Of a stretch of DNA of 64,000 nt, positions 8,318 to 56,493 are shown in pieces. The stretch spans positions 13,991 through 77,990 of the forward strand of contig NW_021833807.1 in assembly GCF_006345805.1 (NCBI RefSeq), written 5' to 3'. The translations under genes were made by a program, and so were the position numbers. How positions within the stretch are numbered: position 1 is the stretch's first letter; each line of letters begins with the position of its first letter. The stretch comes from Octopus sinensis. Its lineage: Eukaryota. The notes under the pieces were generated by a model. That model made no database searches. It was given only the letters and a program-made list of their open reading frames with translations, and was not told where the DNA came from.

Positions 8318-10382
8318 CATATTTTCAATGTTTATTTTTCAATGAGTACAAAATGTCACTGAAAAGTATTATAAATCGTCACGCTCCGGCAGCCAGTATC
8401 GCGTGCGTGTTGCCACGAAGAACTGCAATTCCGATACGTTGGCGAAGCCAATACCCCTCGCGACTGTCCCTCCTTCGTTTAGCCAGCATCGCCCCAATTT
8501 CCTTGAGAAATTCCGCGGTTTTGGATCCCACTACACCAGACGTCTCTATCGAGATTGGGACAAAACGGAAAAGTTTTCCGATCTCCAAATACTTAGATAT
8601 CTTCGCCTTTTCTGCTGCATTAGCAGCCCAACCGGGCGAATGAATATTCCGAAGAATCGTGGACTGGGAGAACGTGTCTACGCACGTCGCATCCCATGCG
8701 AGTGATTTTCCCTGGGAGTACGGGAAAAGAGTTATCCCATCGGGCCTTCTGCCATCTCCCCGGTCAAGCCCGACGGGTTCCAGGTGTGCTGGAAATCCTG
8801 CGCTCTCGAGGGCCCGTCGTATTATGTCGTTGAGTGCGGCATGGCGGGGAGCGCGACCTGCACTCCTCTTGCAAGACAAAGGGTGTAGTCCTTTGGAATC
8901 GACTATTCCTCCACACCGGCATCTGTGTTCCTGACAGACGTCAAGACCCAAGCGTTGCGCAACACCGATTCTCACACAATCGTCGTCCATAAGCGTACCG
9001 AATGAACTGCATGGAAATGCGTGGAGCCATGCACCACTCCCGTGCTGTGCCCCGGATAGCAAACAGACGAGCCGGTGTTGGTTCAACTCCCGCTTCAGGT
9101 CATCAACGACAGCCTTGCATGATATTGCGTCCCAACAATTCTGTCTCGAGACATCATCTGGGATTGAAAGTCCGGCTTCCTTCCATTGCAAGCAAGCCTT
9201 GTCAAATACTGTGTCCAAGGAGAGTCCAGTAGTGTTACGTAGGATTTCCTGGACGAGATGACTGCAGCTTGAAAGCGATGACAGATATGCCGGGAAAGCG
9301 AAATCCAGCGCCGACCTGAGACCCGTTCCTCCAATGCGTGTAGGAAGCTTGCATTGATTCCAACCAGGTTCGTCAAAGTAGATGTTCAAGAGCGATTCAG
9401 CTGAACTTCTCAAAGTCCTATCCAGTGTCTGTAGAATGTCTCGATGTTCCAAGCAGGGAAAACAACGGAGAGCGTATTGGAGTTTAGGCAAGCCAATGCT
9501 ATTTTTCAAAAGGAAGAATGCAGTATGAGCATTGAGTAAGGAGAGTTTCTCCGTAACTCTAGAAAGACCCTTGTTTTTTTCCAGCAGATGGCACCGCAGT
9601 TCCTTTTCGCCAAGTGGGCACCCAAGAAAGTATGCCCTCTCCCGAGGTAAGACAGTAATCCCGGGTAATATCGATTCGAAAGACTTGACCACGTTGATAA
9701 AATCACTTTCCGAGTATGTGATATTTATCAGCTCCGATTTCTTTATATTTATATCAAGTCCGAGTTTTCGTAGTACAGGCACGGCTTGTGACAGAACGTC
9801 AAAAACTTTTCCCCACGGCCCTCCAATCGTGGCATCATCAAGATACCAGAGGTTCAGTTCCGCGCTGATGGAACGTACAGTTTCGTCGATTGCCAACGCA
9901 AAGAGAAGTGGACCAAGCGGGTCCCCTTGCTGGACTCCAGTCTCCGAATAGATAATCTTGTCCGCAAAGACGAGTGAAGACTTGGTTCCGTAGGCCAGGT
10001 AGACGAGTGGAATGAGTTCCGGGGCTCGTTTGCTTACAGTCTCGAAAATTTGATCCCTCCGCAGTGAATTAAAGGCATTGCGGATGTCAAGCTTGACTCC
10101 CATTTTTGGATTTTGTTCGTTTTTCTGTGTGAAAAAGCACCTTGCGGCATGCACCGCCGCCTCACATCCGTTCTTTACCCCAACTCCGAGTTGGAAGGGG
10201 GAGAATTCTTCAGATATTCTCGGACAGACAAGACTGCATGCAATTTTAGCTGTTAGCCTTCTGAAGTAGTTCCCGACCGCGATAGGGCGGGCCCCACCTT
10301 CGGGTTTTTTGAAGCCAAGTAGGTGTGCGCTGAAAAGAAGCTCCCTTGCGAGAGGAGGGATATCCCCGTTCAAAATACGCAT
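8318..10382 (-). mobile_element. 5'-truncated CRE-like retrotransposon (family B), open 667-aa RT-Zn-RLE ORF
   Basis: RPIAVG..FRRL, DIRNAFNS, GVQQGDPLGPLLF, WYLDD, CRCG..H..C, RHAALND, RRPDG, WDATC. Possible 8-bp TSD CATATTTT (weak). Confidence 0.9.
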
Positions 10383-12271: not shown

Positions 12272-12820
12272 CAGTGGGTCAAATTAGTCTTGCGACACTT
12301 GTATATTTTTAATAAAATTTTCTTTTCTTAAACATACCTGTTTTTATCTCATTTTTTCCAAAGGCTAAAAAATTAAACAAAGTTTTTTACATAATAAAAC
12401 ATTTAAAAATAATCCAAAGAAAATTTTATTTTAAAAAAATTTTGACATTTTAAACAAACAGTCACAAAATCAAATGCTAATTAGTCTTGGGACAAATTAC
12501 TTAATACTTTGTAAAGTATCCGTTATTCTCCAAAACTGCATTTAAGCGATTTTTATAATTGTTAACAAGCTTTTTACAAGTTTCAACAGGAATTTTATTC
12601 CATTCTTCAAAACAAAATGATTTTAATTCCGCGATATTTTTTGGATTATGCGGCCATACTTTTGCTTTTAATTCCTTCCAAAGGTTTCCAATCGGATTAA
12701 GATCTGGGGACTGACTTGGCCATTCAAGGGTATCAATCAAATGTTCTTCTAGCCATTTTTGAGTTTTTTTGCGGTGTGCTTTGGATCATTGTCTTGTTGA
12801 AATGTCCAATTTCCTGCAAT
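12272..12820 (-). mobile_element. Tc1-like transposase 3' part with IR/DR end (5' part at 17415-17590)
   Basis: FQQDNDPKH...WPSQSPDLNPI.NLW...GYFTKY; repeated AATTAGTCTTG.GACA at about 12280 and 12480. Confidence 0.8.
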
Positions 12821-15800
12821 CATTGAGCGACAACTCGTCTATGAAGAAAAATATTTTAAGGGTAAATAAAATAAAATTTTAAAACAATTACTTTTTATTC
12901 TGAACTTTTAAAGCAAATCAAACCATCAATTAGCTTAAAATAGCAATCTACTTCAAATTCATGAAAATTTTCACATGCTATTCTCAGTTCAAGTTCCTTT
13001 TTGCAGTCTGTCGCAGACACTTCAAGATACCTTCCTGACTTAATTTGTGTCATTTTCACAAAGTCTTTGTTCTTCCCTGCCCAAAACATTGACAAAAGCT
13101 GCCAAATTTGTGTGCGCTCTGTTAAAAGAACTGTTCAACAGCTTATGCCAACCTTCCAATGAATTGGTCGTCCTGGGCATTGACTTTAATACCCGATGAA
13201 AACAACTCCAAAAACTGATCTCATAAGATGGGTCAGCAATAAATTGTTTTTTAAAATAAATCAAAAAATTCATTATTTGTTGGTTGTTTTCTTTTCCTGT
13301 CGCATCAAGAGAAAATTTTTCAAATTCCAATAAAACATTTTCCACAGGGATGAAAGCTAAATGGTAGCATTTCCTCAATAATTTTCGTTCCGACGATGAA
13401 ACGTCTTTGTAGGCTCCCACAAGACCAAGACATTTTATTTTCCGCCATATGATTTGGCCGAAATGGAAATTGCAGCCAAATACATTAGACGACAAAAAAC
13501 TGATTTTGTGGAGTTAATTAACCCCTTTTCAAAATCAATTAAAATACTCATCAAAATTTTTTCCGTTGCCTGACCGTGGAGAGGAGAGCCGAGAATAATA
13601 AGGTCTTCCTTTTGGGTTATTCTGATTTCAGGAATGAGTGAGGTAAAGTTTCTGTGGATTTCATCGAAAGAGGCCACGTTAGTTTCTGTGGATTGGGTTG
13701 GAAACAATTTCTTGTTGTGGTGGTATCAATCAATTTTTCTTATCGTACATTCTTGTTGTGGTATCGATCTCATTCCATATCAATCTCTTTCCTTATATAA
13801 TCTTTTTTCTTTTCTGTCTTTTTTTTCACTGTTTAATTTTTGATTATTGTAAATTCTTTCATCCTATACGTTTAATGAGTTCTCTATGCTACTCGTGCAA
13901 CTGTACCAATTCGCGCAAGAGGGGAAGGGTATGCTCCTCCTGCGGCAATTTTTACCACCTATCGTGTGTAGGTCTATCTAAGGCCTCATCTTCTCGTATT
14001 TCTCTATGGAGATGTCTCAATTGTCTAGAGGGTGTTGTTTTATCTAACACTTGCCTAATCGACCCTCCTAAGCCTACTCCCAGCACTCCTGCTGACGATT
14101 CCTCGTTCAATAGTTATACATCTGTTGTCATTTTGCAATTTCTTTCGAATTTCCGCCTCTTAAAGAAGATCCCCATCAGACTGCCAAAAGGCTCACGTGC
14201 TACAGCCGCTGAATCCCTATGCACATTGATCCGTAAAGCCATAAATACCAACCAAAACGAGGACTGGGCCAAACTTTTCTGTTTCCCCGTATTCGCCCTG
14301 AACCTACACACTAGCAAAGGCTCTTCCGAATCCCTGACTTCGAGGCTTAAGAACTCCATCCTCTTATATCGGAATCATACTATTTCCTTTTTTCTTTCCC
14401 AGAAATATGTTTTTCCCAAAACATCGAATAACACCTTCGAATGCAATTTCAGTAAAGAATCCATTCCAAACTATTGGAAGGTGACTTCACTGCCGCTCTA
14501 AGAATTCTTTGCAGTAACGACTCATTTGCCTCTATTGGGACAGGACTCTCGAGCTGTTAAGGAAAAACATCCCGACGTTAAAAATGATCTAGAATTCCTT
14601 TCTCGTCCTCATTTTACCGAAGTTAAAAAAGTGAGCAAAGAAGAGCTCCTTTATAATCTCAAATCATTCCGACCCTCCAGTAGTGGGGGGTTAGACGGCC
14701 TTTGTCCCGGTCACATTCGCGACCTTTTATCACTCAATTCGTCTGATGCAGGTGTGAACCTAATTGATTCATTATGCGACCTGATAACCCTTTTCATCAG
14801 TGGCCATATCTTTGATTTCGCACGTTCTCTCTTCATGTCTGGAAGCCTCACCGCCCTTAATAAAAAGGACGGCGGAATTAGACCGATTTCTGTTGGGTGC
14901 ACTTTTAGACGCCTTGCAGCCAAAATATTATGCAGTCGTAGCTCCCATTCCTACCCGAGCATCTTTAAAAACATCCAATTGGGTGTCGGTGTCAGAGGAG
15001 GTTGTGAAGCATCAGCCTATTCAGTCAGAGAGTTTATTGCTTCCAAGAATGTGTCTGACAATTGTGTCATCTTGAAAATTGACATGCGAAATGCGTTCAA
15101 TTCGATCGACCGTTCCTGTTTCCTTGGAGAGTGTATGACTCAGTTACCTGAAATCATGCCGTTCGCTAAACTTTGTTACGAGCACAGTTCCAGCCTCCTT
15201 TTCGAGGGTTCAAGTATCCTCTCGTCCACCGGGGTACAACAGGGTGATCCTCTCGGACCACTCCTTTTCGCATTGGGTATCAACCCTATAGCAATGTCAG
15301 TCAAATCTCCCCTAAACATTTGGTACTTGGACGATGTCACAATCGGTGGCCCGGCAGATCAGGTTCTCAAAGACGCCCTTATGATATCCTCTTGGCTCGG
15401 CCACATCGGGTTATCCTTGGATCCGTCAAAGTGTGAGCTGACTAATCTTAACGTGGCCTCTTTTGATGAAATCCACAGAAACTTTACCTCACTCATTCCT
15501 GAAATCAGAATAACCCAAAAGGAAGACCTTATTATTCTCGGCTCTCCTCTCCACGGTCAGGCAACGGAAAAAATTTTGATGGAAAAGACATCAAATATGG
15601 AACAAGCAGCGAGTCGGTTATCCCAGCTAGATGCACATGAAGGCTTGTTCCTCTTGAAGAATTTTTTATCCATTCCAAAAATTCTGTATATCCTCCGTTC
15701 ATCTCCATGTTTCCTTCATCCTAAACATCTTGGGTCAATAGACTCTATCATTCGTCGTCATGCCGAACTTATTTGTAATGTGCAACTTGATGATCTCGCA

Positions 15801-17414
15801 TGGAAACAAGCTTCCCTACCTATTCGTATGGGAGGTATCGGTCTCCGTTCACCTACCGACTTGGCTCTTCCAGCCTATTTGGCCTCACGATCATTTTGTG
15901 GTCCCCTCATCGGCGTCATTCTCAAGTCTTTAAATGAATGTACCCCGTGTCGGTGGATGCAAAACGGCCTCGAGTCTTGGAGCAGTCATGGTCTGAGATT
16001 CCCCGAAGTGGAATCTTTACAGAGACATTGGGACGAAATCTGGTGTAGGGAGACTTACAGAGTTATCGAACTGTGCATGGACCAAGAACGGATCATATGT
16101 CTCAGATCGGGTGCACAACCCACTTCTGGCTCCTGGATAAGCGCTTGTCCTATTGAGTCTACCGGTTGTAAACTGGACGACGATACCATTAGGATCGGCC
16201 TATGTCTACGTCTCGGCTTACCGATGTGCACCCCACACCCCTGCAAATGTGGAAAGAGGATTGGTCCATTGGGAAGGCACCCACTTTCTTGCACTCGTAG
16301 CGCCGGTCGTTTTCCCCGACATTCCGCCGCCAATGACATCATCAAAAGGGCCATGGACGCTGCCGGATTCCACTCTCAACTCGAACCAGCTGGTCTCGAT
16401 AGAGGGGATGGCAAACGCCCAGACGGCGTAACCATCTACCCGTAAACGAGAGGGAAAGCACTTGTTTGGGATTTTACCTGCCCTGACACGTTTGGACCTT
16501 CTTCATTCGGAAGTTCGGCATTCTTTCCTGGCTCTGCTGCAAAACGTTCTGAAGAGTTGAAGAAAAAGAAATACTCTTTCCCGGCAGACAAATATCTTTT
16601 CCAGCCGATCGCTGTGGAGACTTCCGGAGTCTTTGGATCAGAGAGTTTTTCGTTCATTCGAAGATTGGGTGGTCTAATCACCAAAAAAACAGGTGATCCG
16701 CGGGAGACGTCGTGGCTCTTCCAAAGGATTTCGTGTGCAATTGTCCGCGGAAATTCACACGCTATCCTAGGGTCATTCTAAAATAATTGATTAAAACAAT
16801 TTTGACATGTTACAAAAAATTAAAATACTTGCTGGTGAAGTAACAAGTGTCTTTATTTCTTCAAATAATGCACAGTAGGGATTTTCTGTTTTGTTGAGCA
16901 AAAGAGCGTGCGAAAGAGGCCAGAATTTACCTAAGTATTTTCCTTGTATTGTAATCATTTGTTCGAATTGATTAGGCACGCTTTTAAAGGTACCATCGAT
17001 AACCCAGACATCTGATTTTCTTAAAATGTCAACCTGATAATCCGAACAAAAAATGACGTAACGATTTACATCATTAATTCCAGAATCCTTGCGATAAAAA
17101 ATTTCGTCCCGATCATTATACCACAAACTTTCAGGAATTTCAGGAATGGTCGCAACAAAATTTGGTATCAGTGTTTCTCTATCCCGTTGAACGAGACGAG
17201 TCAATGAACGTTTTTTTGGCAAGATTTTAATGACGTCAACATTGGCGCCAATGAGGCTTATTGACACCACATTCATAGTTCTGTCTTCTGTTTCAGGTCA
17301 GAAACTAGTTTCATGCTTTTTATCTCATGATCCTCAAATTTTAATTAATTTAGACTTAATCTGGTAAAAATAAAATTTTTTATTTATTTTAAGTAGGCGA
17401 GTTGTCGCATAGCC
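12821..17414 (-). mobile_element. MULE/Mutator-like element interrupted by a CRE
   Basis: WVIDGTFKSVP..F.QMITI (16791-17276) joins IDFEKGL...GCNFHFGQIIW...PRTTNSLEGWH (13040-13548). Inverted GCGACAACTCG(T/C)CTA at 12827-12841 and 17394-17408. Confidence 0.85.
13549..16817 (+). mobile_element. Apparently full-length CRE-like retrotransposon (family C): PHD-RT-Zn-RLE, one frameshift and one premature stop
   Basis: PHD C4HC3 at about 13885-14025; RT ORF 14526-16445; RLE continues past TAA 16443 to 16781; 12-bp TSD AATTAAAATACT at 13537-13548 and 16818-16829. Confidence 0.9.
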
Positions 17415-27767: not shown

Positions 27768-29384
27768 TCAGCGTTGTTTAGACATGGCAAGACGTCGTTT
27801 CTTTTCAACCATTTTAGCATTATATTTATCACCCATTATTTCTAATATTTTTAATCTGCCCAATTTTTTAGTTTGTGGTCGCAGCTTTTCTCCAATATCA
27901 CAAACAAGTGATGGATTCTCAACATAAGCAAACATTTCCTCCAATCTGATCATTTCATCAAGTCGATTCATCACTTCCAACTTTTTTTCCATCGTCTTTC
28001 TTTTATTTTCCTGCAAACTCTAAAACATCCCCAAACCTCAAATAACAAATTAGCGTCTCTTTCTTCTCCCCAACGAACAAATGTCTCATTCATTGAAAGG
28101 ATTTCCTCTTTCTCATGCTTCCAAATACGGGATGTGACGTAATCTTCTACCTGATTTTCCAAACTAACAGTTGATATTTTATTTTTAAAATTATCCTCAA
28201 GTGTCTTCAAATTAAAGGATAACTCAAAAAACCGTCAGAATATTCAAAAATTCATCCCGACGAGCAGGAGTAATGAATCTCTTTTGTGCATAAATTGGAA
28301 TTCCCTCTTTGTAGTCATCACGGACGTGAGCATTGTTAAGACATATCCTCACCAGTCCAAACTTTTGAATATAAAAAACAAATTAAACAAAATCTGACGG
28401 AAAAGTGTCCTCCATCTTTGAAATCGATTCAAAAAACGTTTCAAAATGTTCATAACAGGCTAATCCGACAAGCCTAAGGACAGAACAGACGGAATCATCA
28501 CTCTCCAAATTGTCAGTCACATACAAAAGTGTCTTTCCACATGCAAGACGGGGATTTTTTACATCAAAATGATCATCGTAGAATTCATTTTCCATAAATT
28601 TGACCCTTTCATAAACTACTGGCTCCTCCTCTTCTATCACATCTTTCTCAGTAAGAGAAAGTTTAAAAAATGGAATAAATTTGACACAGGCAAGTAGTGT
28701 CAAAAGTTGTACGACAGGAGAAGTCATGTCTTCTTGAAGCATTCCTTCGACGGCAACATCAAAAGCATCTTCATTGTTTTTTAAAACGACATACCTTTGA
28801 TATTTCCTTCGACCAAGTGATGATCAATAAGAAGAGCCATTCCCCATTGATCGGGGAATATTCCAAATTCTATTTTCTGGACACACATGTCAGTAAGGGA
28901 AAAAGATTTCGATAATTTTAGAAGTGACCTCACTACGGCATGATGGAGAGATGGAAGTTGAATTTGACCGACAGTGGACTTTCGGTGTCTGGAAATAACT
29001 TATTTCGAGGTACCGTTTGAGAATATCCACAAAAAGATCAAATACCTTCATATCTTTAAGGAAGTACATTTTGCAGGCTAACTAAGACAGTAATGATAGT
29101 CACAAACAATACTAGTTCTAATGTATGGATACTATAAGGCTCATTCTTCTCCATACATTCTTGTATTTGGACTGACAATTCCTCTTTAAGGTTTACTTAG
29201 ATATTAAACCAGCAGATTTGTTTGGGACGTTAGGATAGTTGAGACTTCGTAACCAAGATTGGTCATCCTTGTATTCGTTGGTAAGGTAAAGTCGAGTTGG
29301 GCACTCTTTAAAACTGTATTAAAAAGATTTACTTAAATAATGAAATATATTATAAGAAAATGAGCAGAGTCGTGATCTATACAT
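27768..29384 (-). CDS. MRPS27: Mitochondrial small ribosomal subunit protein S27-like (PPR), multi-exon
   Basis: Spliced ...RSLLKL...IEFGIFPDQWGMALLIDHHLVEGNIKDAFDVAVEGMLQED resembles MRPS27 (VQYGIFPDNFTFNLLMDSF...KDALSVVFEVMMQE). Start MYRSRLCSF is basic, like a presequence. Introns 26-31 nt; one homopolymer frameshift. Confidence 0.75.
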
Positions 29385-29391
29385 GTGACTA

Positions 29392-32300
29392 TTATTATTA
29401 GCACTGTCATAGGAACATAATGTAATTTAAACTAATTAAGTTCCCACATGTGCCACATATGAGACTATCTTTTCGGTCATAATTTCCATGATGTGCGGTT
29501 GTATGCTATACTCCTGAGAGTATCTAGGTCGTCTCCATTTTTCAGTTGTCTTTTAACGCGTTGTAGTTCTTTTGAGATTACAATAGGTAATGTATTTCGT
29601 GGGCGTCCTCGGGACGCAGATCTTTCGTCCTTTGCGTAATATGATTCCATTGCCCAGTTAGCATAAACATCCTGGTCGAGTCTTAGAATGTGGCCCAATA
29701 GGCGCCAACGTGCTTCGGTAATGTCCACACTGACGGGTCTGCTGTTGCAGATATTGTATAGGGTGGAGTTCTTGATTTTCTTTGGCCAGTTGATGCCAAT
29801 AAGAATTCTTAACTGTCTTCTATGGAATGCATCAAGAGATTTTGATTCAGACTCAGATATTCCCCATGTTCCTCCGTTGTACAAAAGTATGGGTTTAATA
29901 AAAGCATTGTATAATTTGGCACGTAAGGCCGTTCCAACCTCGCGGTTTCGTAGCCAAGTGGTCCGCAGTTTGTTAAGTGCAACAGTCGATAGCATCTTTC
30001 TCCTCATAATGTCTTCACTATCTCCTAAAAGAGTTCCAACTTTTTTCGAGTTTCGCCATTTTTCGTCTGTTCTATTTGCCTCCCGGTTGATTGTTACATA
30101 TTCGGTTTTTTCTATGTTCACTTTTAAGAACCATTTTTCCAGTGCCTGAGGAGCAATGTTCAGCAGTTCTTCGAGAGTCGACTTATCATGAGACAAAAAG
30201 TCTACATCGTCGGCATATATCACTTCAGTTATTGAAGTAGACTTCACTAGTTTTCTCAGATCTCTTAGTGCCGCTTCAAGATAGACAATGAATAGTACAG
30301 GTGATATTGAATCACCTTGGGGCGTTCCAATGCTTGTTTTGAAAGATCTTGATTGTACGGGTCCGATCTTCACCGTTAACTCGGTGTCTATAAGTAGTGC
30401 TCGAACCATTCTGATCGAGTCATTGTCAAGAATAGTTTTGAGGATCTCCATTAGCTTGTCTCTGCGGATTGTATCAAATGCCCTGCTCATATCAATGCCC
30501 AATATTGTGGTCGCCATTTTAAATTTCTGAGATATGGCACAGATCCATCTATGTCCCCATACTACATCTGCAGTTGATCGCCCAGGCCTGAATCCACTTT
30601 GGCTAGCCGACAGATATTCATTAACAGGGTCCTTAATACGTTCCAGTGTTACGAGCGAGAAGATTTTCCTTATTGTGTTCAAGAGTATGATTGGGCGAAT
30701 GTTGTTAAGAGGACCTTGCGGCTTGTTGGGTTTTTGGAGAGGAATTAGCGTTCCTTTCCCAATAGGCGGTATGGTATTTCCATGGAACATCTCGTTCAGG
30801 AGATTTGTGATTATAGTTGAGATCTCCATTGGGGAGTACTTTATCAATTCACCGTTGATGTTGTCTGGACCCGCCGCACGGTTGTTTTTTATTTTTTTAT
30901 AGCCTTCAAAACTTCAAGGTGTGTTATTTGTTGTTTAGATAACGTTCTTCACCCTCATCGAGAGCATCGGCCCTGCCATTGAATAGTATTTCGAAGTGGT
31001 CGGCGATTGTATTTACCATTTCGATTGGGTTTCCAATTGTTTTCCCATGTTCATCGTGCACAACCAGTTTTGTTTTCTGTTGTCGTCGGCGTAGTAGTCT
31101 GATGGCTGCGTACATTTGCGCACCATCCTTTAAGTCTTCAACTTCTGATATTCGAGAGTTTAATAAAGCTTTCACGTATTTAAGATTTTCCTTCTTGATT
31201 GTTCTCGATATTTTCCTACGTTCTCTTTTGAGTTTTTCCTTTGCCTCCTTGTCGTTGGTGTTTTCAATTTTCAGTTGGATGGCTTTTGTTTTGTTGCCAT
31301 TTCGGCAACATTTGGATTCAATGGGTTTGAGTGGTTTCTGAATGCAGTCGTTCCAATGTTTCCGTTGCAGCTTTGTGAATAAGTTTTTCTAATATCCCAG
31401 CTTTTGTTTGGGTCTTTTACCGTTTCTGTTACTTTTAGGTTTTCGATGATTGCCTGGGAGTATTTTTCCTTGGTAACATCTGATGTAATCAGTTTTTCCA
31501 CTGAGTATCTAATTCGGTTTGATTCATTTTCTTTTGAAAGAGGCGATCCAAAAATTCTTTTCAGTCTCAATCGTGCCACAATGACTTTGTGATCGCTCAG
31601 TGTAAGTGCCCCGCCATATGACCTGGCATCCAGCAATCGATGTTTTTCTTCTTGTCTACAGATGATATAATCGATTTGATTATAGATGTTGACGTACTCC
31701 CCATTTTTGTTTCTTCTAGTCCCGGTCCACGTGGTTTTATGACGTGCCGCATGAGGAAAGACCGTATTGCATAGCAGTAGCTTGAATATGCTGCAGAAGT
31801 TCACAAGCATTTCACCTGGTGCATTTCTTATCCCCCGTCCGTGTCTGCCCATGAACACTTCTTCACCACGGCCTTTGCCTGCCTTAGCATTCCAATCACC
31901 GGCAATTAGTATAAGGAAGGATGTTTTTATACTCGTGTAGGTCTTTGATAGCATGTGATAGAAAGAGTCTAGTTCATCCACGTTCTTCTTCAGTCTTCCA
32001 CTTTGTGGGGCGTAGACATTTATAATGCTGATTATTCGATCCGTGTTGGTCAAAGTTTTTTGTCTCAGTTGTAGTACACATATGCGGTCGTTCACACGGT
32101 AGTATTTGTGAATTGAATTCCCCTGCCCATAATGACGTGATTCTGATGGAAGGAGAATGATTCGATACTCGTTGTGTATCTCATCTAGCCCGCCTTTGAC
32201 CTTCGTTTCTTGAAAGCATCCGATAGTTGCACCATATGCATTCAGATCCCGGCATAGGATTTTTCGCTTGGATAGGTCAGATAGTCCTCTGACATTGAAT

Positions 32301-32419
32301 GATAGCAAAGTAAAATCTCTTTGTAGCCTCATATGTGATTAAGACTTTGTGCAATAGAGTTGCGTCACTAACTCAACCAGAAAACTGAACGTGCGTGGGT
32401 TTCAACCCACGTTTGGTAA
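29392..32419 (-). mobile_element. Near full-length RTE-clade LINE (APE + RT) with (TAA)3 tail
   Basis: SFNVRGL, QET, AGDWNA, NQIDY, SDH endonuclease motifs; QSGFRPGRS, GTPQGDSISP, YADD RT motifs; about 950 codons broken by frameshifts; 9-bp TSD ATGTGACTA at 29383-29391 and 32420-32428. Confidence 0.9.
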
Positions 32420-32510
32420 ATGTGACTAAATTTAAATTATTACATCAAATAATAAATATTTATATCATTTAATTAAATATATTTATATAGTTTTTTGAGT
32501 GAATGTTGTA

Positions 32511-33271
32511 ATGCGACTAGAAAACATATATTTTCAAGAATTACAACAAAATGAACGAAATATAAAGACCCTAGTGAAGGTGGCTTTAATCCACGAGAGT
32601 TATAGCAAATATCAACTCAGAATATAAGCCGAGAAGAGCTAAATAACATCAACACTGAGGTAACCCGATTATTATGCTCAAGTAATGAAATAATAAATGT
32701 ATTTCAACTTATTTACAATTGCAGGGCCTCAAAAACACAATTCCAGTTCACGTCGATTTAAAAAGTGATAAAAATGATAAATTAAAAATCTTTTCAGAAA
32801 CTTTAAAAATGTATAAATATATCACAATTCTAGTCTCTCTGGACATTTCAGAAAAGCAAATTTTGACTACAACCGAGAAACACAGTCGGGGACAAGGAAG
32901 GAGGTGCCCGATGACGTCGCCGTACGAATGAGGAGGTATAAGTTATTGGTGAACAGGGAAGGATAAGGGAGATACCTGAACGGAAGAGTACAGTGAGAAT
33001 AATTGATAATTTAAATAATCTAAAATCGCTTATTTCTACACGTGTTGAGCAAAATGACAAAATAAACGAAATTTTATTGTCGACTTCGAATTTGCTTGAT
33101 AAAAATGTCACTTTATTGGAACAGATTGGCCACAGAGTTACTATAGCCAGAAGATTGGTCTATAAATATATTCTCAGAGACAGGACTCTCGTTGTCCTAC
33201 TTATTTTCGGATATATTTCATTTTTCCTGTCAGTATTTTACGTTCTTAAAGTTCGATTGTCTAAATTGTAA
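32511..33271 (+). CDS. BNIP1: SEC20/BNIP1-like SNARE, tiny introns
   Basis: C-terminal ARRLVYKYILRDRTLVVLLIFGYISFFLSVFYVLKVRL matches the Sec20 SNARE end plus TM. In-frame splicing from ATG 32511 with 21-26-nt introns. Confidence 0.65.
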
Positions 33272-33374
33272 ATTGAATTATAATTAAAATTTATTGAATA
33301 AAAATATTACTTTAATTAAATAGTCACGTTTTTTACTTGTGGTGATTTTTGTGTTATTTAAAAATTAATAAGAA

Positions 33375-33695
33375 ATGGGACGGAAGAAGGTTGGAGCAGA
33401 TAATACAAATGCTAATCTTGCTATGGCTGTGAGAAGTGGTAAGTGCTCTCTTGGTCGACGGCAAACACTTCGGTTGATGACGGCAGGAAAGGCCAAATTG
33501 GTTGTGATTGCAAACAATGCTGATCATCTACACAAATCAGAGTTAGAATACAATGGATTCATGGGGAAAATTCCAATTCTTCATTATAAGGGGAATAATA
33601 ACGAGTTGGGGACTGCTTGCGGAAAGAGATTTAAAGTCACCATTATGGCCATCCAAGATCCCGGAGATTCGGATATTATTAAATCCAAGTCTTAA
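33375..33695 (+). CDS. RPL30: 60S ribosomal protein L30 (eL30), intronless
   Basis: LAMAVRSGK.SLG..QTL...GKAKLVVIANN...HYKGNNNELGTACGK.FKV..MAI.DPGDSDII. Confidence 0.95.
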   Translation: MGRKKVGADNTNANLAMAVRSGKCSLGRRQTLRLMTAGKAKLVVIANNADHLHKSELEYNGFMGKIPILHYKGNNNELGTACGKRFKVTIMAIQDPGDSDIIKSKS

Positions 33696-40010: not shown

Positions 40011-41190
40011 ATGGTTTGTAACAATATATAATGAGTATTACAGGACGATAGTAGTTCAAGTGATTTTTCTATTGAAGAAATTGATGAATATTTTCGTAAT
40101 TATCAAGAAGACGATGTAATAACTTCCAATGTAGATCAGTTTAAGGAAATGTTGCAATCCACTAATCAACAAATTCAGGCGTATTTTCTTCATTTGTTAA
40201 AATTTAAGTATTACTGGAAAGCCCCATAAAATCTATTATGAAAGTATACTTACAACTCCAGCTAAACACTCGTAAGAAAAATTCTATATAAAACACACAG
40301 AATCTCAAAAACTGACAAGAATTCTTCTAAATCCAAAATAATGGCAATTGGGACTTATCAGGACTCAGTTAATTACCAGAAAGTCTCATCTCCTGATTTG
40401 TTTGTAGAACAGAACACTGTAGAAGAGGTAGGTCATTTGTCTTATTGTCAGTCAATGACTTCGAAGGCAGTTCCCGGCAAGCTTTTGAATCCGATTTTTT
40501 CAACTCCTACTCAAAAAATAATAGTTTTCGTTATATTATCTTAAAATAGAATCGAGAGTGTTTTTCGACTAATAAGCAGAATTCAAAACTGACTAAAATT
40601 GTTAAAGCCGTCAAATCTGTAACTAAAAAACAAGAATTTAGTCACAAAAAAGTACAAAATATTTAAAATATGAAAGGCATGGCAGCAGTTTGACAACAAA
40701 CCAGTGGAGACTGATAGACATTTGGAGAAACGTAAGGCAGAACTAGAAAGAAAGGTGTTGGAGATGAAAAAGAGTCGAGAATTGAGACAAAAGTTGGTTC
40801 AGGAAAGAAGAAATGAAATACAAGCAAAAATCAATAAAAAGGAAATTACAAAAACGCCGGCAAAAAAGCATGTTGAAGTGATCCAGGTCCAAGAAAAGCG
40901 CGAAGAAAGTTATGACATTAGCAATTTAAAGGAGGATTATTTTGATGATGAGACTTGTCCTGAGAATGAGATCCCTGAATGGGCCCGATCCAGTTGTGAA
41001 CTGTAAGTTATGTGTAGAGGAGCTAATTTTGGAGCAATGTCGTCACCAATTGAAGGAAAATATAGACCCTGTCCGTATTTTTGGAAAATTGGATCTGTCA
41101 AAGGTCAATGAGATGTTTGCATCGTTCGGAGTTCAAGATTATGGACACGACGATACAGTGTGGGACAAAGAACCAGTTTGTCAAAGCTGA
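40011..41190 (+). CDS. INCENP: INCENP-like protein (coiled coil + Aurora-B-binding IN-box)
   Basis: YDISNLKEDYFDDETCPENEIPEWARSKELILEQCRHQL...RIFG...VWDKEP after a 25-nt intron. The ATG is followed directly by a 30-nt intron. Confidence 0.65.
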
Positions 41191-47804: not shown

Positions 47805-48527
47805 GTAAAAGTAAAAAGATAGCCAAGCTAATTAAAGGCCTCACGAGACACCCGGCCAGCCTCGCCAATCCGTTCCCTCGGATCACAGAAATCGACAGAC
47901 GTTCCAGGAGCCAAGAATACTCTCTTGGATCGTGGCTAGTCCTTGAAATCCGTCGAGCGAGCGAAGGAAGCGGAGTGTCTTGGGGCCGAAGATCCCGGAG
48001 GACTCCACGGCAATTGGAGTAAAGAACAGCGATTTGGAGAGGTGGCCGTACTTGAGAATCTTTCGCTCCTCGGCCTGCCTCGAAGCGTGCCCAGGATAGG
48101 CGGCGGACAGAGCGAGATTTCCCAGCGAGAACGTGTCCGAACAGGTAGAATCCCAAATAAGGGATTTCCCCTGCTCGTATGGGAAGGTGGACATGCCGTC
48201 TGGGCGTTTGCCATCCCCTCTATCCAATCCAACAGGTTCAAGGATTGACGCGATGCCAGCTGAAGCGAGGGCTCTCTGTATGATCGAGTTGAGTTCACTG
48301 TGACGGGGGGCACGACCGGCACTCCGCCGGCAAGCGAGGGGATGCAAACCGTATTCGTCAACAATTCCCCCACAACGGCATTTGTGCGTCTGGCAGATTT
48401 TCAGCCCGACACGGAGGGAGATTGCAATTCTTAGGCATTCCTTGTCCACCAGGTTCCCGATGGAAGGGAGAGCCTTTAACCAGACACCGCTGCCTTCGCA
48501 GCGACCTGCACGGAGGCAAGCGATATA
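47805..48527 (-). mobile_element. CRE-like 3' fragment (family A, longest copy)
   Basis: CRCGGIVDEYGLHPLAC...RHSELN...KRPDG; shares 3' UTR with 930 and 4210. Confidence 0.9.
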
Positions 48528-49330
48528 TTTCCGGTGTTTCTTTTCGGTTGATATATATTTCCTCCAGTGCTGAAAACTCTTTCGCTTTCTACAGACGAAG
48601 CAGGAGCTGTTAAATATTTCAACGCCATTTTACTTAAGCGGGGAAATATATTCGTGAAGTTCTTCCACCACGTAAATATATTATCAGTTCGTGGTATTAA
48701 ATCTAGCTCTAAATAATTTTGAAGTTCCGTCAAATAGCAATGTTGGTAATTTTTCTCCATAGACATAATTCGGTTAGAAGATGAAATTTGAGAAAATATT
48801 TCTTCAAATGTTAATGTTTCCGAATTTTGTATTTTTGTCAAAGAAATGGCATTTTCAGATAACTTCGTGTCAGGAGAATTACTATCCTTCATATATTTAA
48901 CAATCAATTTTTTAATTCTTTCAATCATACAAGTCTTATGAAATCTTGTTTTAAATCTGGGATCCAATGTTGTTGTAATACATAGTGATTCGTTTTCAAA
49001 ATAAAAGGTAAATCTTTTATCAATAGAGGACATTAATTTTTCAATTGTTTCTTTGATTTCATAAAATTCACAAGATTCTTTTGCCTTTTCAAGAAATAAG
49101 AGAATTGTTTTGATTGAAGGAATAATCATGGAAGCAGTAGCACTCCTTTTGCTCGCTTCAATTGTTATTTCCTCAAATGGTTTCAAAATTTTAACAATTT
49201 TTTCTGCTGTTATTCACTGTATATCTGATAATATTGAAAGATTATTATCAATTGCAAATGTTACGAGAGCTTTTCGTTGTTCGATCACTCTCGATAACAT
49301 GTAATAAGTAGAATTCCATCTGATATTAAT
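48528..49330 (-). mobile_element. hAT (ZBED1/4-like) transposase C-terminal remnant; second copy 53187-53990
   Basis: RWNSTYYMLERV.EQRKAL...LDPRFK...WWK...FPRL.KMALKYLTAPASSVESERVFS. Confidence 0.85.
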
Positions 49331-53028: not shown

Positions 53029-56000
53029 TAATATAATCGAAAAGGTTGAGACAGGGGAAAATTGACAGAAAAGTTTCGGAAACACTTGTTTAAAGTAAAG
53101 ATTTCGAGAAGGACAATTAACGATATTCCGAAGATGCGTGAAAGGATTTTCGCACAATATAAAATCGTCAATTTCTCTACAAAAACTTTCCGGTGTTTCT
53201 TTTCGGTTGATATATATTCCTCCAGTGCTGAAAACTCTTTCGCTTTCTACAGACGAAGCAGGAGCTGTTAAATATTTCAACGCCATTTTACTTAAGCGGG
53301 GAAATATATTTGTGAAGTTCTTCCACCACGTAAAATATTATCAGTTCGTGGTATTAAATCTAGCTCTAAATAATTTTGAAGTTCCGTCAAATAGCAATGT
53401 TAGTAATTTTTCTCCATAGACATAATTCGGTTAGAAGATGAATTTGAGAAAATATTTCTTCAAATGTAATGTTTCCGAATTTTGTATTTTTGTCAAAGAA
53501 ATGGCATTTTCAGATAACTTCGTGTCAGGAGAATTACTATCCTTCATATATTTAACAATCAATTTTTAATTCTTTCAATCATACAAGTCTTATGAAATCT
53601 TGTTTTAAATCTGGGATCCAATGTTGTTGTAATACATAGTGATTCGTTTTCAAAATAAAAGGTAAATCTTTTATCAATAGAGGACATTAATTTTTCAATT
53701 GTTTCTTTGATTTCATAAAATTCACAAGATTCTTTTGCCTTTTCAAGAAATAAGAGAATTGTTTTGATTGAAGGAATAATCATGGAAGCAGTAGCACTCC
53801 TTTTGCTCGCTTCAATTGTTATTTCCTCAAATGGTTTCAAAATTTTAACAATTTTTTCTGCTGTTATTCACTGTATATCTGATAATATTGAAAGATTATT
53901 ATCAATTGCAAATGTTACGAGAGCTTTTCGTTGTTCGATCACTCTCGATAACATGTAATAAGTAGAATTCCATCTGATATTAATATCTCGAGTAGAATTC
54001 CATCGAAAATTCCATACAACGCTCGAAATGTTAAACAAAATATTTAATTACATTTTAATAAATAAATTATATGTCACAGTCCAGACGTGCGTCACGCCGG
54101 ACGTGAGTCACTTGTTAAAAATTTATAAAAATAAATAAAAAATAACTAAATAGATATACCTTACTCCAATTATACCACATTAGTGTTTTTTATGTCTTTT
54201 TTTGGATAAAAGTTCATATTATTCACCCACAAAAAACAAACATAACGCATTTTTGACCCGACATAACGTTTTTATCGATTAACTTGAATTTTTTTTATTT
54301 AAAAAAAATTTTAAAATATTAAAAATTATTTTTATCTCTTGGACCTCTTGCAATAATAGGAGTGATAACCGGCCTTGTAGCTAGCAATTTTTTGGACTGA
54401 AATCGAATAATTTAACTAATACCTGACAATAAGCACATTTTTCAATTATTTTGCTAATCTCTTCACGAGTTGCACCATATATCTTTCCCTTAAGCATAGA
54501 AAACATTATCTCTTCCAAAATGTACATAATGTGTTCACACTAATCATAATTAAATAAATTGATACTTCTATATATTTCAGCTTTACTCTTGTTCTTCTAT
54601 GCAGAATAATCTGACTTTTTTATTCTTTTGGTATATGTAGGCTATATTTTCCTCAATAAGTATTCGTTAGCAATCCTACGTGGTCTAAAACGTTCTCTTC
54701 TACTGATTCCGTCATCAAATGATCCAAATTGTTTAAAAGTTTTTATTTTCAATAAATCCTCTTGTGATAGTGTAATTAGAAACATTTGATAACGTGCAAA
54801 ATTTAAAAATAAAATACAATAATATATAATATTAATTAAGAAATTGTGATTTTTGAATGATTTTATTATATAGAAAATATAAAAATATCCAAAATCTGAC
54901 CAAGTGACTCACGTCCGGCGTGACTCACGTCTGGACTGTGACATTTAATTATTTTTATTTTATATATTTTATCGTTTATTTCAAAGAATTTTTTCCTTGT
55001 CACGTTGTTATCTTTGTTGAAGTATTTTCCACTGTTCTATGTTTTCTAGATGCCTAAAATGAAAATTGATCACGAAAAAAAACTCGAAATAGCCCAATAT
55101 ATTAAACGGAACCAGCTTTCAGAGCGCAGAATTGCGGAAAATTTCAAAGTTAGCAGGGCTACAATTTCACGTATAAAAAAAGATTTCTATTTTCTTGATA
55201 ATGGAACTATTTATTCTGATTTATCCGAGCAAACTAGTGATTCCGAAAAGCTTAAAAATTTCGATCTTAAAGTTTTCGAAATTTTTCACAAATTGCGACT
55301 TGAAAAAGTTTCCTTATCTGGACCGACCATTAAGAAAATTGGGTCGATGGTCGCTTCAAAATTATCATTGAATAATTTCAAATCGTCTAATGGTTGGCTT
55401 CAAAGATTCATGAAACGACATAATTTTACAATACAAAACATTGTGTGGTGAAAAGGGTTCCGCAGATACATCCATGCTCCCTCATTTTTTCCAAGAACTA
55501 GATACAAAAGTTGTTTATATGGTAAAGAAAATGTATTTAATTGCGACGAAACTGCACTTTATTTCTAAAATACACCAACTAAGTCATTTGTACAATGTGG
55601 TGAAAATTCGTTTGGTTTTAAGAAGCACAAGGAAAGGATTAGCCTGCTTCTATGCTGCAGTTAACTTGGAGAGAACTCGAGCCTTAATTATCGGCAAATA
55701 TCGAAACCCTCGGTGCTTAAACAATTCAATCCTGATGTTTTTAACGTCATGTTCTTTTCTTCTAAAAATTCGTGGATGACACACTGAAATTTTTAACAGA
55801 AAGTAATATTGACAAAAGAATGACTTTCTCTTTAACGGTATCTGGATTTAGAACCAGAAACTTGTTATTTCTGGATGAATTCGGATTTAATTTGCATACC
55901 TCAACAAATTATGAATATGCAGAAGTAAATTATGATCCGATTCTATATCAACCTTTATCAAAGGGAAAAAATATATCGTTGTGTTCAATAATATCCATAA

Positions 56001-56493
56001 TGGGAATAGAACTTTCTAAAATAATTGATGGTGCGTACAACACAATTATTTTTTCTGAGTTTATCAATGAATGTTTTACAAAAGGAATTTTCACTGATGA
56101 TTCTGTGATAATTTTAGATAATGTTAAATTTCATCATTCTTCAAATGAGGATATATTAATGAAATACCCTGTAAGAAAATTTCATGGAGACAGTGGATCA
56201 GTAAATCATGATGAAAAATATATTGCTGATTTTAATTAAACAATTAGTTTAAAAATTGAACAATATGGATTGGACAATGCTTATAATGCAGATAAAACCG
56301 GTGTTTTTACAAGGCGATTCCTTCTAAAATGTGTGCACTAAATCACGGCCTGGAATAAAGTTGTCGAAGGATCGATTTTCTTTACTATTATGCGCAAATT
56401 GTTCTGGTTCCGATAAAAGAAGGCCTAAAAGTCCAAAGTTTTTTAAAATTTTCAACATTGGAAAATATGTTACCTACACCAATTCCAATAAGG

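What the first reader, a model, noticed from the sequence alone, without database searches (positions are those of the whole stretch)
29382..32513. Near full-length RTE inserted at the MRPS27 start codon, splitting a roughly 90-bp head-to-head promoter
Seen: the 9-bp TSD (minus strand TAGTCACAT) includes the A and T of the inferred MRPS27 ATG (29384-29382), and the RTE's (TAA)3 tail abuts it. Removing the element leaves MRPS27 and SEC20/BNIP1 ATGs about 90 bp apart, divergently oriented. Inference: a housekeeping mitoribosomal gene is separated from its promoter by 3 kb of sense LINE. The RTE 3' UTR supplies an acceptor-like TTCCTATGACAG 19 nt before the ATG, so cis- or SL-trans-splicing, or an RTE-derived promoter, could rescue expression. 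It could equally be a heterozygous deleterious allele.
Basis: partly seen in the sequence, partly recalled or inferred. Interest (0 to 1): 0.75.

Follow-up and report, generated by a model that had tools for sequence, protein, structure and literature searches.

The report
Young RTE insertion at MRPS27 start codon
A very recently inserted 3-kb jumping gene (an RTE-type LINE) sits directly against the start codon of a mitochondrial ribosomal protein gene in what is almost certainly a dicyemid parasite contig inside an octopus genome assembly. The insertion is real, but it is an ordinary kind of event and its effect on the gene cannot be read from the sequence.

Summary
A 3,028-bp LINE on the minus strand (29392-32419) has an N-terminal endonuclease, a reverse transcriptase and a (TAA)3 tail. 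It is flanked by a perfect 9-bp duplication, TAGTCACAT, that occurs nowhere else in the window. The copy next to MRPS27 supplies the A and T of its ATG (29384). Without the element, the MRPS27 and SEC20-like ATGs are 89 nt apart and divergent.

My spliced MRPS27 model (9 exons, 466 aa, introns 25-31 nt) is intact and collinear with mS27 from its N-terminus, so the start codon is credible.

New context:
- The contig belongs to the Octopus sinensis assembly, but its ultra-short introns mark it as dicyemid parasite DNA.
- The LINE family is very young. Thirteen copies are 98-99.7% identical, and this one has no private substitutions.
- The family prefers TTAGTC / TAG(T/A)CACAT targets, which explains the position.

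The insertion is therefore too recent for the intact MRPS27 to show that it is tolerated. The most likely reading is a new, probably polymorphic or heterozygous allele with reduced or lost MRPS27 expression. A new start site in the last 25 nt is the main rival. Rescue by cis-splicing or SL trans-splicing has no support.

The parts
29383..29391 (-). Target-site duplication, copy next to MRPS27 (minus strand TAGTCACAT). Its last two bases are the A and T of the MRPS27 ATG.
   Evidence: Exact 9/9 match to 32420-32428 and unique in the window. Family duplications are 8-16 bp.
29392..32419 (-). RTE-type non-LTR retrotransposon, 3,028 bp, the longest of 13 copies seen.
29392..29400 (-). (TAA)3 tail of the element.
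   Evidence: Sequence. Other copies carry (TAA)3-7.
29401..29476 (-). Element 3' UTR as assembled. It holds the acceptor-like TTCCTATGACAG (29415-29404) and upstream ATGs at 29458, 29449, 29418 and 29410. The 29410 uORF (25 codons) overlaps the MRPS27 ATG out of frame.
   Evidence: The 3' end is conserved in all copies. In the other copies one extra A (element position 2934) extends the ORF by about 14 codons.
29480..30913 (-). Open segment of 478 codons with the reverse-transcriptase domain.
   Evidence: Pfam RVT_1 E 1.4e-31. 99% identical to P0001, about 50% to the next relatives.
30927..31388 (-). Linker segment of 154 codons, open in a different frame from the endonuclease and RT.
   Evidence: Private deletions at element positions 1024 (2 nt), 1061, 1132, 1490 and 1528.
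31274..32332 (-). Endonuclease (APE-type) part of the ORF, ATG at 32332-32330. It carries a private in-frame 24-nt deletion at element position 298.
   Evidence: Pfam Exo_endo_phos E 1.9e-6. Relatives are named 'craniofacial development protein 2-like'. Deletion.
32333..32419 (-). Element 5' UTR (87 nt). The first 33-40 nt, with the hairpin GTGGGTTGAAACCCAC, are seen only in this copy.
32420..32428 (-). Target-site duplication, copy at the element's 5' end.
32429..32510 (.). Remaining 82 nt of the AT-rich divergent spacer. It now lies between the element's 5' end and the SEC20-like ATG. The former MRPS27 upstream DNA now points into the LINE.
   Evidence: Sequence. GC of the 100 nt on this side is 0.16.
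27768..29384 (-). MRPS27 (mS27) gene, 466 aa, intact. Nine exons: 29384-29333, 29305-29210, 29183-29113, 29081-29014, 28988-28795, 28768-28389, 28361-28233, 28204-28037, 28010-27768. Eight GT-AG introns of 25-31 nt.
32511..33271 (+). SEC20/BNIP1-like gene, tentative 224-aa model with introns at 32580-32605, 32746-32765 and 32922-32961. It has a C-terminal membrane anchor.
   Evidence: Pfam Sec20 only 18.7-21.9 bits, below the gathering score of 27. No PDB match.
33375..33695 (+). RPL30, a single exon 103 nt downstream of the SEC20-like gene. It was used to identify the contig.
   Evidence: Pfam Ribosomal_L7Ae E 8e-18. Exact look-up gives VCDQ01006093.1 of GCA_006345805.1.

Best explanation
A member of a young, currently active RTE-type LINE family of a dicyemid parasite inserted by target-primed reverse transcription into the 89-nt AT-rich spacer between the divergent MRPS27 and SEC20-like genes.

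How the site was chosen and what the insertion did:
- The site was chosen by sequence. The first nick fell just before TAGTCACAT, a word the family prefers.
- The staggered second nick fell between the T and the G of the MRPS27 ATG.
- The 9-bp duplication therefore rebuilt the start codon next to the (TAA)3 tail.
- MRPS27 keeps only 7 native upstream bases. Its former upstream DNA now drives into the LINE.

The event is so recent that it is most likely still polymorphic or heterozygous in the partly clonal parasite population that was sequenced along with the octopus.

On this allele MRPS27 output is predicted to be lost or strongly reduced. Transcripts coming through the LINE carry a roughly 950-codon ORF and four upstream ATGs in the last 75 nt. 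The other allele would cover the function.

Shown: the structure, the duplication, the family, its youth, the target preference and the intact gene. Inferred: the polymorphism and the loss of expression.
For: Structure and duplication.

Family: 13 copies at 98-99.7% identity with a shared 3' end, 5' truncations, two 5' inversions and duplications of 8-16 bp.

Youth: 0 private substitutions in 3,028 nt. At the 0.44% divergence of the allelic contig pair L002/L003, about 6.7 would be expected.

Target preference:
- TTAGTC in sense orientation occurs in 4 of 12 independent target sites against 0.03 expected.
- L014 was nicked before TAGACACAT, 8 of 9 bases identical to this site and in the same register.
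- Most sites are AT-rich.

Start codon and intact gene.

Upstream ATGs at 29458, 29449, 29418 and 29410, with the last uORF overlapping the ATG.

Parasite origin:
- The contig belongs to the O. sinensis assembly.
- Introns are 25-31 nt. Among animals, introns that short are reported only in dicyemids and myxobolids.
- D. japonicum is collected from O. sinensis and has 1.24% heterozygosity and 49% repeats.
Against: - No empty allele was found. The neighbouring RPL30 is the only member of its 90% cluster and sits on one contig, so the assembly shows no annotated second haplotype for this locus.
- No reads or transcripts could be examined, so neither zygosity nor expression is measured.
- Two other insertion loci (L002/L003 and L011/L012) carry the element on both allelic contigs, so some family members are not heterozygous.
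- With only 89 nt between the two start codons, the native 5' UTR must have been very short. A proximal start site could therefore survive the insertion.
Confidence: 0.5

Rival explanations
1. The insertion is tolerated because transcription of MRPS27 now starts in the last 25 nt or so before the ATG (29385-29409: AGTGC, the (TAA)3 tail and the duplicated TAGTCAC). The promoter would be either a cryptic AT-rich one in the LINE 3' UTR or tail, or a start-site word carried in the duplication itself. The result would be a very short leader free of upstream ATGs.
For: - The native leader must already have been short, since 89 nt are shared by two divergent genes and the nearest native upstream ATG is at -24.
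- Only 5' ends within 29385-29409 avoid the overlapping uORF.
- TAGTCACGT lies 46 nt upstream of the RPL30 ATG, and TAGTCAC lies 30 nt upstream of the first ATG of an INCENP-like gene. Both are in gene orientation and set in AT-rich DNA.
- The LINE 5' UTR carries the similar TTAGTGAC 8-14 nt downstream of where three near-full-length copies begin.
Against: - TAGTCAC is not significantly enriched in the window: 8 against 3.85 expected, with 5 of 100 shuffles reaching 8.
- AGTCAC occurs 12 times against 6.8 expected in AT-rich segments.
- Occurrences in other loci are not in promoter-like settings.
- The insertion is too young for the intact gene to argue for tolerance.
- There are no transcript data.
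Confidence: 0.33
2. Expression is rescued by splicing to the AG at 29405-29404. This would be either cis-splicing from a donor in the old 5' UTR, removing the whole LINE as a 3-kb intron, or addition of a spliced leader in trans.
For: An AG with a short pyrimidine stretch (TTCCTATGACAG) lies 19 nt before the ATG, and a 5' end there would be free of upstream ATGs.
Against: - All 8 MRPS27 introns are 25-31 nt. Dicyemid introns are 24.9 +/- 2.5 nt or have a median of 27 nt. A 3,000-nt intron is far outside that range.
- There is no usable GT donor context in the 7-nt native leader.
- The library holds no report of SL trans-splicing in dicyemids.
- The AG is part of the conserved 3' end of all 13 copies, so it was not selected at this locus.
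Confidence: 0.05
3. MRPS27 is translated from a long read-through LINE-MRPS27 transcript by reinitiation or leaky scanning. The transcript would be driven by the old MRPS27 promoter or by the LINE's internal promoter.
For: - The orientation is sense.
- No canonical AATAAA lies at the LINE 3' end.
- The old upstream DNA now abuts the LINE 5' end.
Against: A roughly 950-codon ORF followed by four upstream ATGs, one of them opening a uORF that overlaps the MRPS27 ATG, makes reinitiation at 29384 very inefficient by established scanning rules.
Confidence: 0.04
4. The junction is an assembly artefact, such as a chimeric long read or a collapsed repeat, and no such allele exists.
For: The contig is low-coverage contaminant DNA with many 1-nt deletions.
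Against: A perfect 9-bp duplication abuts both independently defined element ends, and the start codon is rebuilt exactly. That is the signature of a real insertion, not of misjoining.
Confidence: 0.03

Closest known systems
RTE-clade non-LTR retrotransposons (C. elegans RTE-1; Schistosoma SR2, SR3 and Perere-3; BovB)
   Same: - One long ORF with an N-terminal APE-type endonuclease and an RT, and no room for an ORF1.
- About 3 kb long, against 3.2-3.9 kb for the known elements.
- A short 3' UTR ending in an AT-rich trimer repeat.
- Duplications around 10 bp and frequent 5' truncation.
The family description is in PMC1291365.
   Different: - It is somewhat shorter (3,028 bp as assembled, about 3,060 with the private deletions restored).
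- The host is a dicyemid. None of the dicyemid papers opened here mentions RTE elements; no literature search for dicyemid RTEs was made.
- It shows a TTAGTC / TAG(T/A)CACAT target preference.
- Its place in an RT tree was not tested.
LINE insertions into promoters or 5' UTRs that cut a gene off from its promoter (for example mutagenic L1 or Drosophila LINE insertions; from general knowledge)
   Same: A sense-oriented LINE between promoter and coding sequence, with the expected outcome a hypomorphic or null allele, or use of a cryptic promoter.
   Different: Here the junction lies inside the start codon and the duplication rebuilds the ATG. The genome is ultra-compact, so the whole promoter region was only 89 nt and was shared with a divergent gene.
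Genes with very short 5' UTRs (mammalian TISU genes, enriched for mitochondrial functions; from general knowledge)
   Same: A mitochondrial housekeeping gene whose leader must be very short, with start-site and start-codon signals close together.
   Different: There is no TISU sequence here, and the actual transcription start is unknown.
L1 twin priming and 5' inversion
   Same: Two family members (L010, L013) have an inverted 5' segment joined to a normal 3' segment.
   Different: This was seen in an RTE-type element of a dicyemid, and it does not apply to the window copy.

Membership tests
[quoted passage not shown] | A single long ORF (about 920-1,070 aa) with an N-terminal APE-type endonuclease followed by an RT, and no gag-like ORF1. 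| tested here: met
   Exo_endo_phos and RVT_1 lie on one strand and are collinear, with only 87 nt before the ATG. In this copy the ORF is interrupted by private 1-2-nt deletions that the other copies lack.
[quoted passage not shown] | A short 3' UTR ending in AT-rich tri-, tetra- or pentamer repeats (PMC1291365). | tested here: met
   A 76-nt UTR as assembled, about 34 nt with the consensus reading, followed by (TAA)3-7 in all 13 copies.
[quoted passage not shown] | Overall length about 3.2-3.9 kb, with target-site duplications of about 10 bp. | tested here: met
   3,028 bp, slightly below the range. The duplication is 9 bp here and 8-16 bp in the family.
[quoted passage not shown] | RT and endonuclease fall inside the RTE clade in a phylogeny with reference elements. 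| not tested
   No reference sequences could be fetched. The only evidence is at the level of names: endonuclease relatives are called 'craniofacial development protein 2-like'. [quoted passage not shown] The C-terminal GRPR and NRTSW motifs recall BovB from memory only.
mS27 / MRPS27 | Full-length match to Pfam MRP-S27 above the gathering score, collinear from the N-terminus. | tested here: met
   160.6 bits against a cut-off of 25.9, E 7.5e-47, residues 19-400 matching profile positions 23-388 of 393. Matches solved mS27 chains at E 1e-8, with model residue 112 aligned to chain residue 110.
Sec20 / BNIP1 | Pfam Sec20 domain above the gathering score, with a C-terminal membrane anchor. | tested here: inconclusive
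   18.7-21.9 bits against a cut-off of 27, and no PDB match. A hydrophobic C-terminal stretch is present in the model.
Head-to-head (bidirectional) promoter pair | Two divergent genes whose starts lie less than 1 kb apart. | tested here: met
   The ATGs are 89 nt apart once the element and one duplication copy are removed. The transcription start sites themselves are unknown.
Dicyemid genome (origin of the contig) | Spliceosomal introns mostly under 30 nt. Among animals this is reported only for dicyemids and myxobolid myxozoans. The host is a cephalopod. | tested here: met
   The eight MRPS27 introns are 25-31 nt. The contig comes from the O. sinensis assembly. The species was not determined.
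5' self-cleaving ribozyme of non-LTR elements (HDV-like or twister variants) | A match to a ribozyme family at the element's 5' end. | tested here: not met
   There is no ribozyme match in Rfam at E up to 5 over 29200-32700. Only a simple hairpin is present.

The most novel reading that the evidence does not exclude
The word this LINE family prefers as a target (TTAGTC / TAG(T/A)CACAT) may also be a start-site-proximal promoter word of dicyemid housekeeping genes. It also lies upstream of RPL30 and of an INCENP-like gene, and a near copy sits in the LINE's own 5' UTR.

The family would then home to core promoters. Its target-site duplication would leave one copy of the word, and here the start codon too, with the host gene. 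The LINE itself would land behind a constitutive promoter. Both would stay expressed, which would be a way for a LINE to live in an ultra-compact genome.
Probability: 0.1. Interest if true: 0.55.

Novelty: new member of a known kind. Interest (0 to 1): 0.3.

Why it matters
For the gene, this is a natural promoter-displacement allele of an essential mitoribosomal gene in an animal with one of the most compact genomes known. If the filled allele is expressed, it would show how little upstream DNA a dicyemid promoter needs.

For the element, it documents an RTE-type LINE family in a dicyemid whose copies are nearly identical, so it was active very recently, and which shows a sequence preference at its target.

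For databases, it shows that contigs of up to 854 kb in the Octopus sinensis reference assembly carry this LINE family. Their proteins, named as octopus proteins in NCBI and UniRef, are probably parasite sequences. That matters for anyone using the assembly for comparative work.

Tried and rejected
- **MRPS27 protein search.** The 466-aa model against 5.8 billion proteins gave no hit at E <= 0.001. No orthologue, transcript-derived protein or second copy could be fetched.
- **Second haplotype.** I looked for one through the neighbouring RPL30. It is the only member of its cluster and sits on one contig.
- **N-terminal fragment search.** I judged a search for partial transcript ORFs futile, because even the highly expressed RPL30 of this organism is absent from every other data set. 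The last search went on the endonuclease instead.
- **Ribozyme or tRNA origin of the extra 5' 35 nt.** No Rfam match and no tRNA.
- **TAGTCAC as a general promoter motif.** The counts do not support it. It is kept only as a lead.
- **A 29-nt intron-like GTTTAAATTACATTATGTTCCTATGACAG in the LINE 3' UTR (29432-29404).** Splicing it would remove two upstream ATGs but create a new ATG at the junction, with another overlapping uORF. It is no rescue.
- **The L005 gene model (Sec1 plus RVT_1).** I found no clear Sec1 exons next to the insertion and did not pursue it.
- **SEC20 identity through solved structures.** Nothing was found.
- **Full annotation of the window's host genes to collect more promoters.** I abandoned this because the window is mostly transposons.

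Full report
**What is in the sequence**

The minus strand between 29392 and 32419 carries a 3,028-bp non-LTR retrotransposon.
- An 87-nt 5' UTR is followed by an ATG at 32332.
- Next comes an Exo_endo_phos (APE-type) endonuclease (Pfam E 1.9e-6), then a linker, then an RVT_1 reverse transcriptase (E 1.4e-31).
- A 76-nt 3' UTR and a (TAA)3 tail at 29392-29400 close the element.
- It is flanked by an exact 9-bp direct repeat, minus-strand TAGTCACAT, at 29383-29391 and 32420-32428. This repeat occurs nowhere else in the 64 kb on either strand.

**The element's ends are confirmed by other copies**

The RT segment is 99% identical to a cluster of nine proteins, all annotated as Octopus sinensis. 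Fetching their loci, plus two endonuclease relatives, gave twelve more copies on other contigs of the same assembly.
- All are 98-99.7% identical to the window copy.
- All run to the same 3' end, ...GACAGTGC(TAA)3-7.
- They are 5'-truncated at different points, and two (L010, L013) have an inverted 5' part.
- Each has its own duplication of 8-16 bp.
- The window copy is the longest. Three others begin at element positions 34-41.

"Near full-length" is therefore right, and the 9-bp repeat sits exactly at ends defined without reference to it.

**State of the ORF**

The endonuclease (element 82-1146) and the RT (1507-2940) share a frame, but the 154-codon linker (1032-1493) is open in another frame. 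Alignment of eleven copies shows why. The window copy has private deletions:
- 24 nt (in frame) at position 298;
- 2 nt at position 1024;
- 1 nt each at positions 1061, 1132, 1490 and 2934;
- 1 nt at position 1528, shared with L009.

It has no private substitution. Its only two differences from the majority are shared with L009 and L005. Every other copy also has its own 1-nt deletions but almost no substitutions. That ratio is the reverse of what real mutation gives, and several of the deletions fall in A-rich or short-repeat stretches. I read them as long-read consensus errors in low-coverage DNA. This is an inference.

**Family assignment**

The architecture matches the published description of the RTE clade (PMC1291365). 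That description covers one ORF with endonuclease and RT and no ORF1, a length of about 3.2-3.9 kb, a short 3' UTR ending in AT-rich short repeats, and duplications of 10-12 bp.

NCBI names the endonuclease relatives "craniofacial development protein 2-like". [quoted passage not shown]

I could not build a tree with reference elements, so clade membership rests on architecture and names. The next relatives outside this assembly are only about 45-50% identical. They come from Elysia, Sycon, Phytophthora and unnamed environmental contigs.

**MRPS27 and its start codon**

The exon at 28386-28823 hits Pfam MRP-S27 at E 2e-20. Joining the open segments at GT-AG sites gave nine exons, eight introns of 25-31 nt and an intact 466-aa protein.
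- The model scores 160.6 bits (E 7.5e-47), with residues 19-400 matching profile positions 23-388 of 393.
- Its residue 112 aligns with residue 110 of mammalian mS27, so the N-terminus is in register.
- Exon 2 has no ATG and is preceded by an in-frame TAA.
- The only ATG that can reach exon 2 is at 29384, through a 27-nt intron (29332-29306).
- The first 18 residues (MYRSRLCSFSYNIFHYLK) are basic and have no acidic residue, as expected for a mitochondrial presequence.
- Upstream in frame there is a stop at 29429 and no ATG.

The start codon is as secure as sequence alone allows.

**The divergent neighbour**

A model starting at ATG 32511 and ending at 33271 gives 224 aa with a hydrophobic C-terminal anchor. 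The Sec20 domain hit is below Pfam's threshold (18.7-21.9 bits against 27), and there is no match among solved structures. "SEC20-like" is therefore probable, not proven.

With the element and one repeat copy removed, 7 + 82 = 89 nt separate the two ATGs. RPL30 follows 103 nt after the SEC20-like stop, as a single exon.

**Whose genome this is**

An exact look-up of RPL30 places the window on VCDQ01006093.1 (77,990 bp) of GCA_006345805.1, which papers cite as an octopus assembly. But genes packed this tightly with 25-31-nt introns are not octopus-like.
- Among animals, introns under 30 nt are reported only in myxobolid myxozoans and in Dicyema (PMC13644364).
- Dicyema sp. has a median intron of 27 nt (PMC6543705). 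D. acuticephalum has 24.9 +/- 2.5 nt (PMC2483917).
- D. japonicum is collected from the renal sac of Octopus sinensis. Its genome has 36.7% GC, 49% repeats and 1.24% heterozygosity (PMC6736024). The window has about 35% GC and is mostly transposons.

I conclude that the contig, and probably the other contigs carrying this LINE family (up to 854 kb), are dicyemid DNA in the octopus assembly. The species is not determined.

**Why the insertion is exactly there**

I lined up the twelve independent target sites at the junction with the tail.
- TTAGTC occurs in sense orientation within or at the edge of the duplication in four of them (window, L006, L011, L013). The background rate predicts 0.03 (Poisson P about 5e-8 before any correction for choosing the word afterwards).
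- L014 was nicked just before TAGACACAT, which is 8 of 9 bases identical to the window's TAGTCACAT and in the same register.
- Most sites lie in DNA of 14-26% GC.
- Several duplications start with TA or TAA, which fits pairing of the (UAA)n RNA tail with the nicked strand.

The position at the start codon is thus explained by the sequence TTTAGTCACAT in an AT-rich spacer. No functional reason is needed.

**Age and what it implies**

The copy has zero private substitutions in 3,028 nt. The allelic contig pair L002/L003 differs by 57 substitutions in 13.1 kb, or 0.44%. At half that per lineage, about 6.7 changes would be expected, or about 19 at the published heterozygosity of 1.24%. The insertion is therefore much younger than typical allele divergence.

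Two consequences follow.
- The intact MRPS27 gene carries no information about whether the insertion is tolerated.
- A non-fixed, possibly heterozygous allele is the default expectation. Dicyemids multiply asexually inside one host, so a clone carrying a recessive defect can dominate a sample. This is general knowledge of the life cycle.

**Consequences for expression (inferred)**

MRPS27 keeps 7 native bases upstream of its ATG. The displaced upstream DNA now points into the LINE 5' end.

Any RNA that enters from the LINE carries the long ORF and then upstream ATGs at 29458, 29449, 29418 and 29410. The last opens a 25-codon uORF that overlaps the MRPS27 ATG out of frame. Only an mRNA 5' end between 29409 and 29385 gives a clean leader.

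Such an end could arise in two ways.
- **A new transcription start.** This is possible. The native leader must have been very short, and the region is AT-rich.
- **Splicing to the AG at 29404.** This is unlikely. A 3-kb intron is out of scale for this genome, and I found no report of spliced-leader trans-splicing in dicyemids. The AG also belongs to the conserved 3' end of every copy.

I put 0.5 on a recent, probably polymorphic allele with reduced or lost MRPS27 output. I put 0.33 on tolerance through a proximal start site, and the rest on splicing, read-through translation or artefact.

**A lead that stays a lead**

TAGTCACGT lies 46 nt upstream of the RPL30 ATG. TAGTCAC lies 30 nt upstream of the first ATG of an INCENP-like gene. 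Both are in gene orientation and set in AT-rich DNA. The LINE 5' UTR has TTAGTGAC just downstream of where three copies begin.

This suggests a start-site word that the duplication would preserve for MRPS27. The counts are not significant, however: 8 against 3.85 expected in the window, and AGTCAC 12 against 6.8 in AT-rich segments. Sites in other loci do not look like promoters.

**Verdict**

The thing itself is an ordinary though very neat event: a fresh insertion of an active RTE-type LINE, directed by target sequence, into a tiny divergent promoter of a parasite genome. Whether the gene still works from this allele cannot be decided without reads or transcripts, and none were reachable with these tools.

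Noticed in passing
whole window; loci L001-L014: The window is part of VCDQ01006093.1 of the Octopus sinensis assembly GCA_006345805.1, but it has dicyemid hallmarks: 25-31-nt introns and tightly packed genes. Contigs of up to 854 kb carry the same LINE family. Their products are named as Octopus sinensis proteins in NCBI and UniRef, for example LOC115230848 and 'craniofacial development protein 2-like'. Parasite DNA therefore appears to be annotated as octopus.
   Followed up: partly
window 29383-29391; L006, L011, L013, L014 target sites: The LINE family has a target preference. TTAGTC in sense orientation is in 4 of 12 independent target sites against 0.03 expected. Two insertions were nicked just before TAG(T/A)CACAT.
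   Followed up: yes
window 33320-33329, 40639-40645, 12459-12465: TAGTCACGT lies 46 nt upstream of the RPL30 ATG. TAGTCAC lies 30 nt upstream of the first ATG of an INCENP-like gene. CAGTCACA sits in another AT-rich stretch. These may mark a promoter word, reminiscent from memory of the fission-yeast HomolD box CAGTCACA, but the word is not statistically enriched here.
   Followed up: partly
window 29392-32419 compared with L004, L006, L008, L009, L011: Copies differ mainly by private 1-nt deletions, several of them in A-rich or short-repeat stretches, and hardly at all by substitutions. This points to uncorrected long-read errors in these low-coverage contigs. Frameshifts in them should not be read as decay.
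   Followed up: partly
window 32385-32419 (minus strand): The first 35 nt or so of this copy (TTACCAAACGTGGGTTGAAACCCACGCACGTTCAG, with a 7-bp hairpin) are absent from the three other near-full-length copies. They could be the true 5' end or captured sequence. There is no Rfam or tRNA match.
   Followed up: partly
L010 2935-5605; L013 3021-6034: Two family members have an inverted 5' segment joined to a normal 3' segment, as in L1 twin priming.
   Followed up: no
L013 insertion site; window 12430-12520: The DNA flanking the L013 insertion is homologous to window 12430-12520, which lacks the LINE. That insertion lies inside another repeated element, and the window holds an unfilled paralogue.
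   Followed up: no
L005 5001-11625: The annotated 536-aa product combines Sec1 and RVT_1 hits. This is probably a gene model that fuses a host gene with a truncated LINE copy.
   Followed up: partly
L002 vs L003; L011 vs L012: Pairs of contigs cover the same locus at about 99.2% identity, and both members carry the same LINE insertion with no difference inside the element. They are either haplotigs or contigs from different parasite genotypes.
   Followed up: partly
window 8379-10382 (-), 13698-16445 (+), 57832-58638 (+), 48476-49186 (-), 55772-56239 (+), 49569 / 54220 and 50350 / 54997: The window holds many other mobile elements. Three more RT-bearing LINEs are present, one of them 49% identical in RT to the element studied. 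There is also a hAT transposase, a DDE_3 transposase and a duplicated segment of about 4.6 kb.
   Followed up: no
window 29432-29404 (minus strand): The LINE 3' UTR contains GTTTAAATTACATTATGTTCCTATGACAG. At 29 nt it has the size and the GTTTAA...AG shape of this genome's introns. Splicing it would not clear the leader of upstream ATGs.
   Followed up: partly
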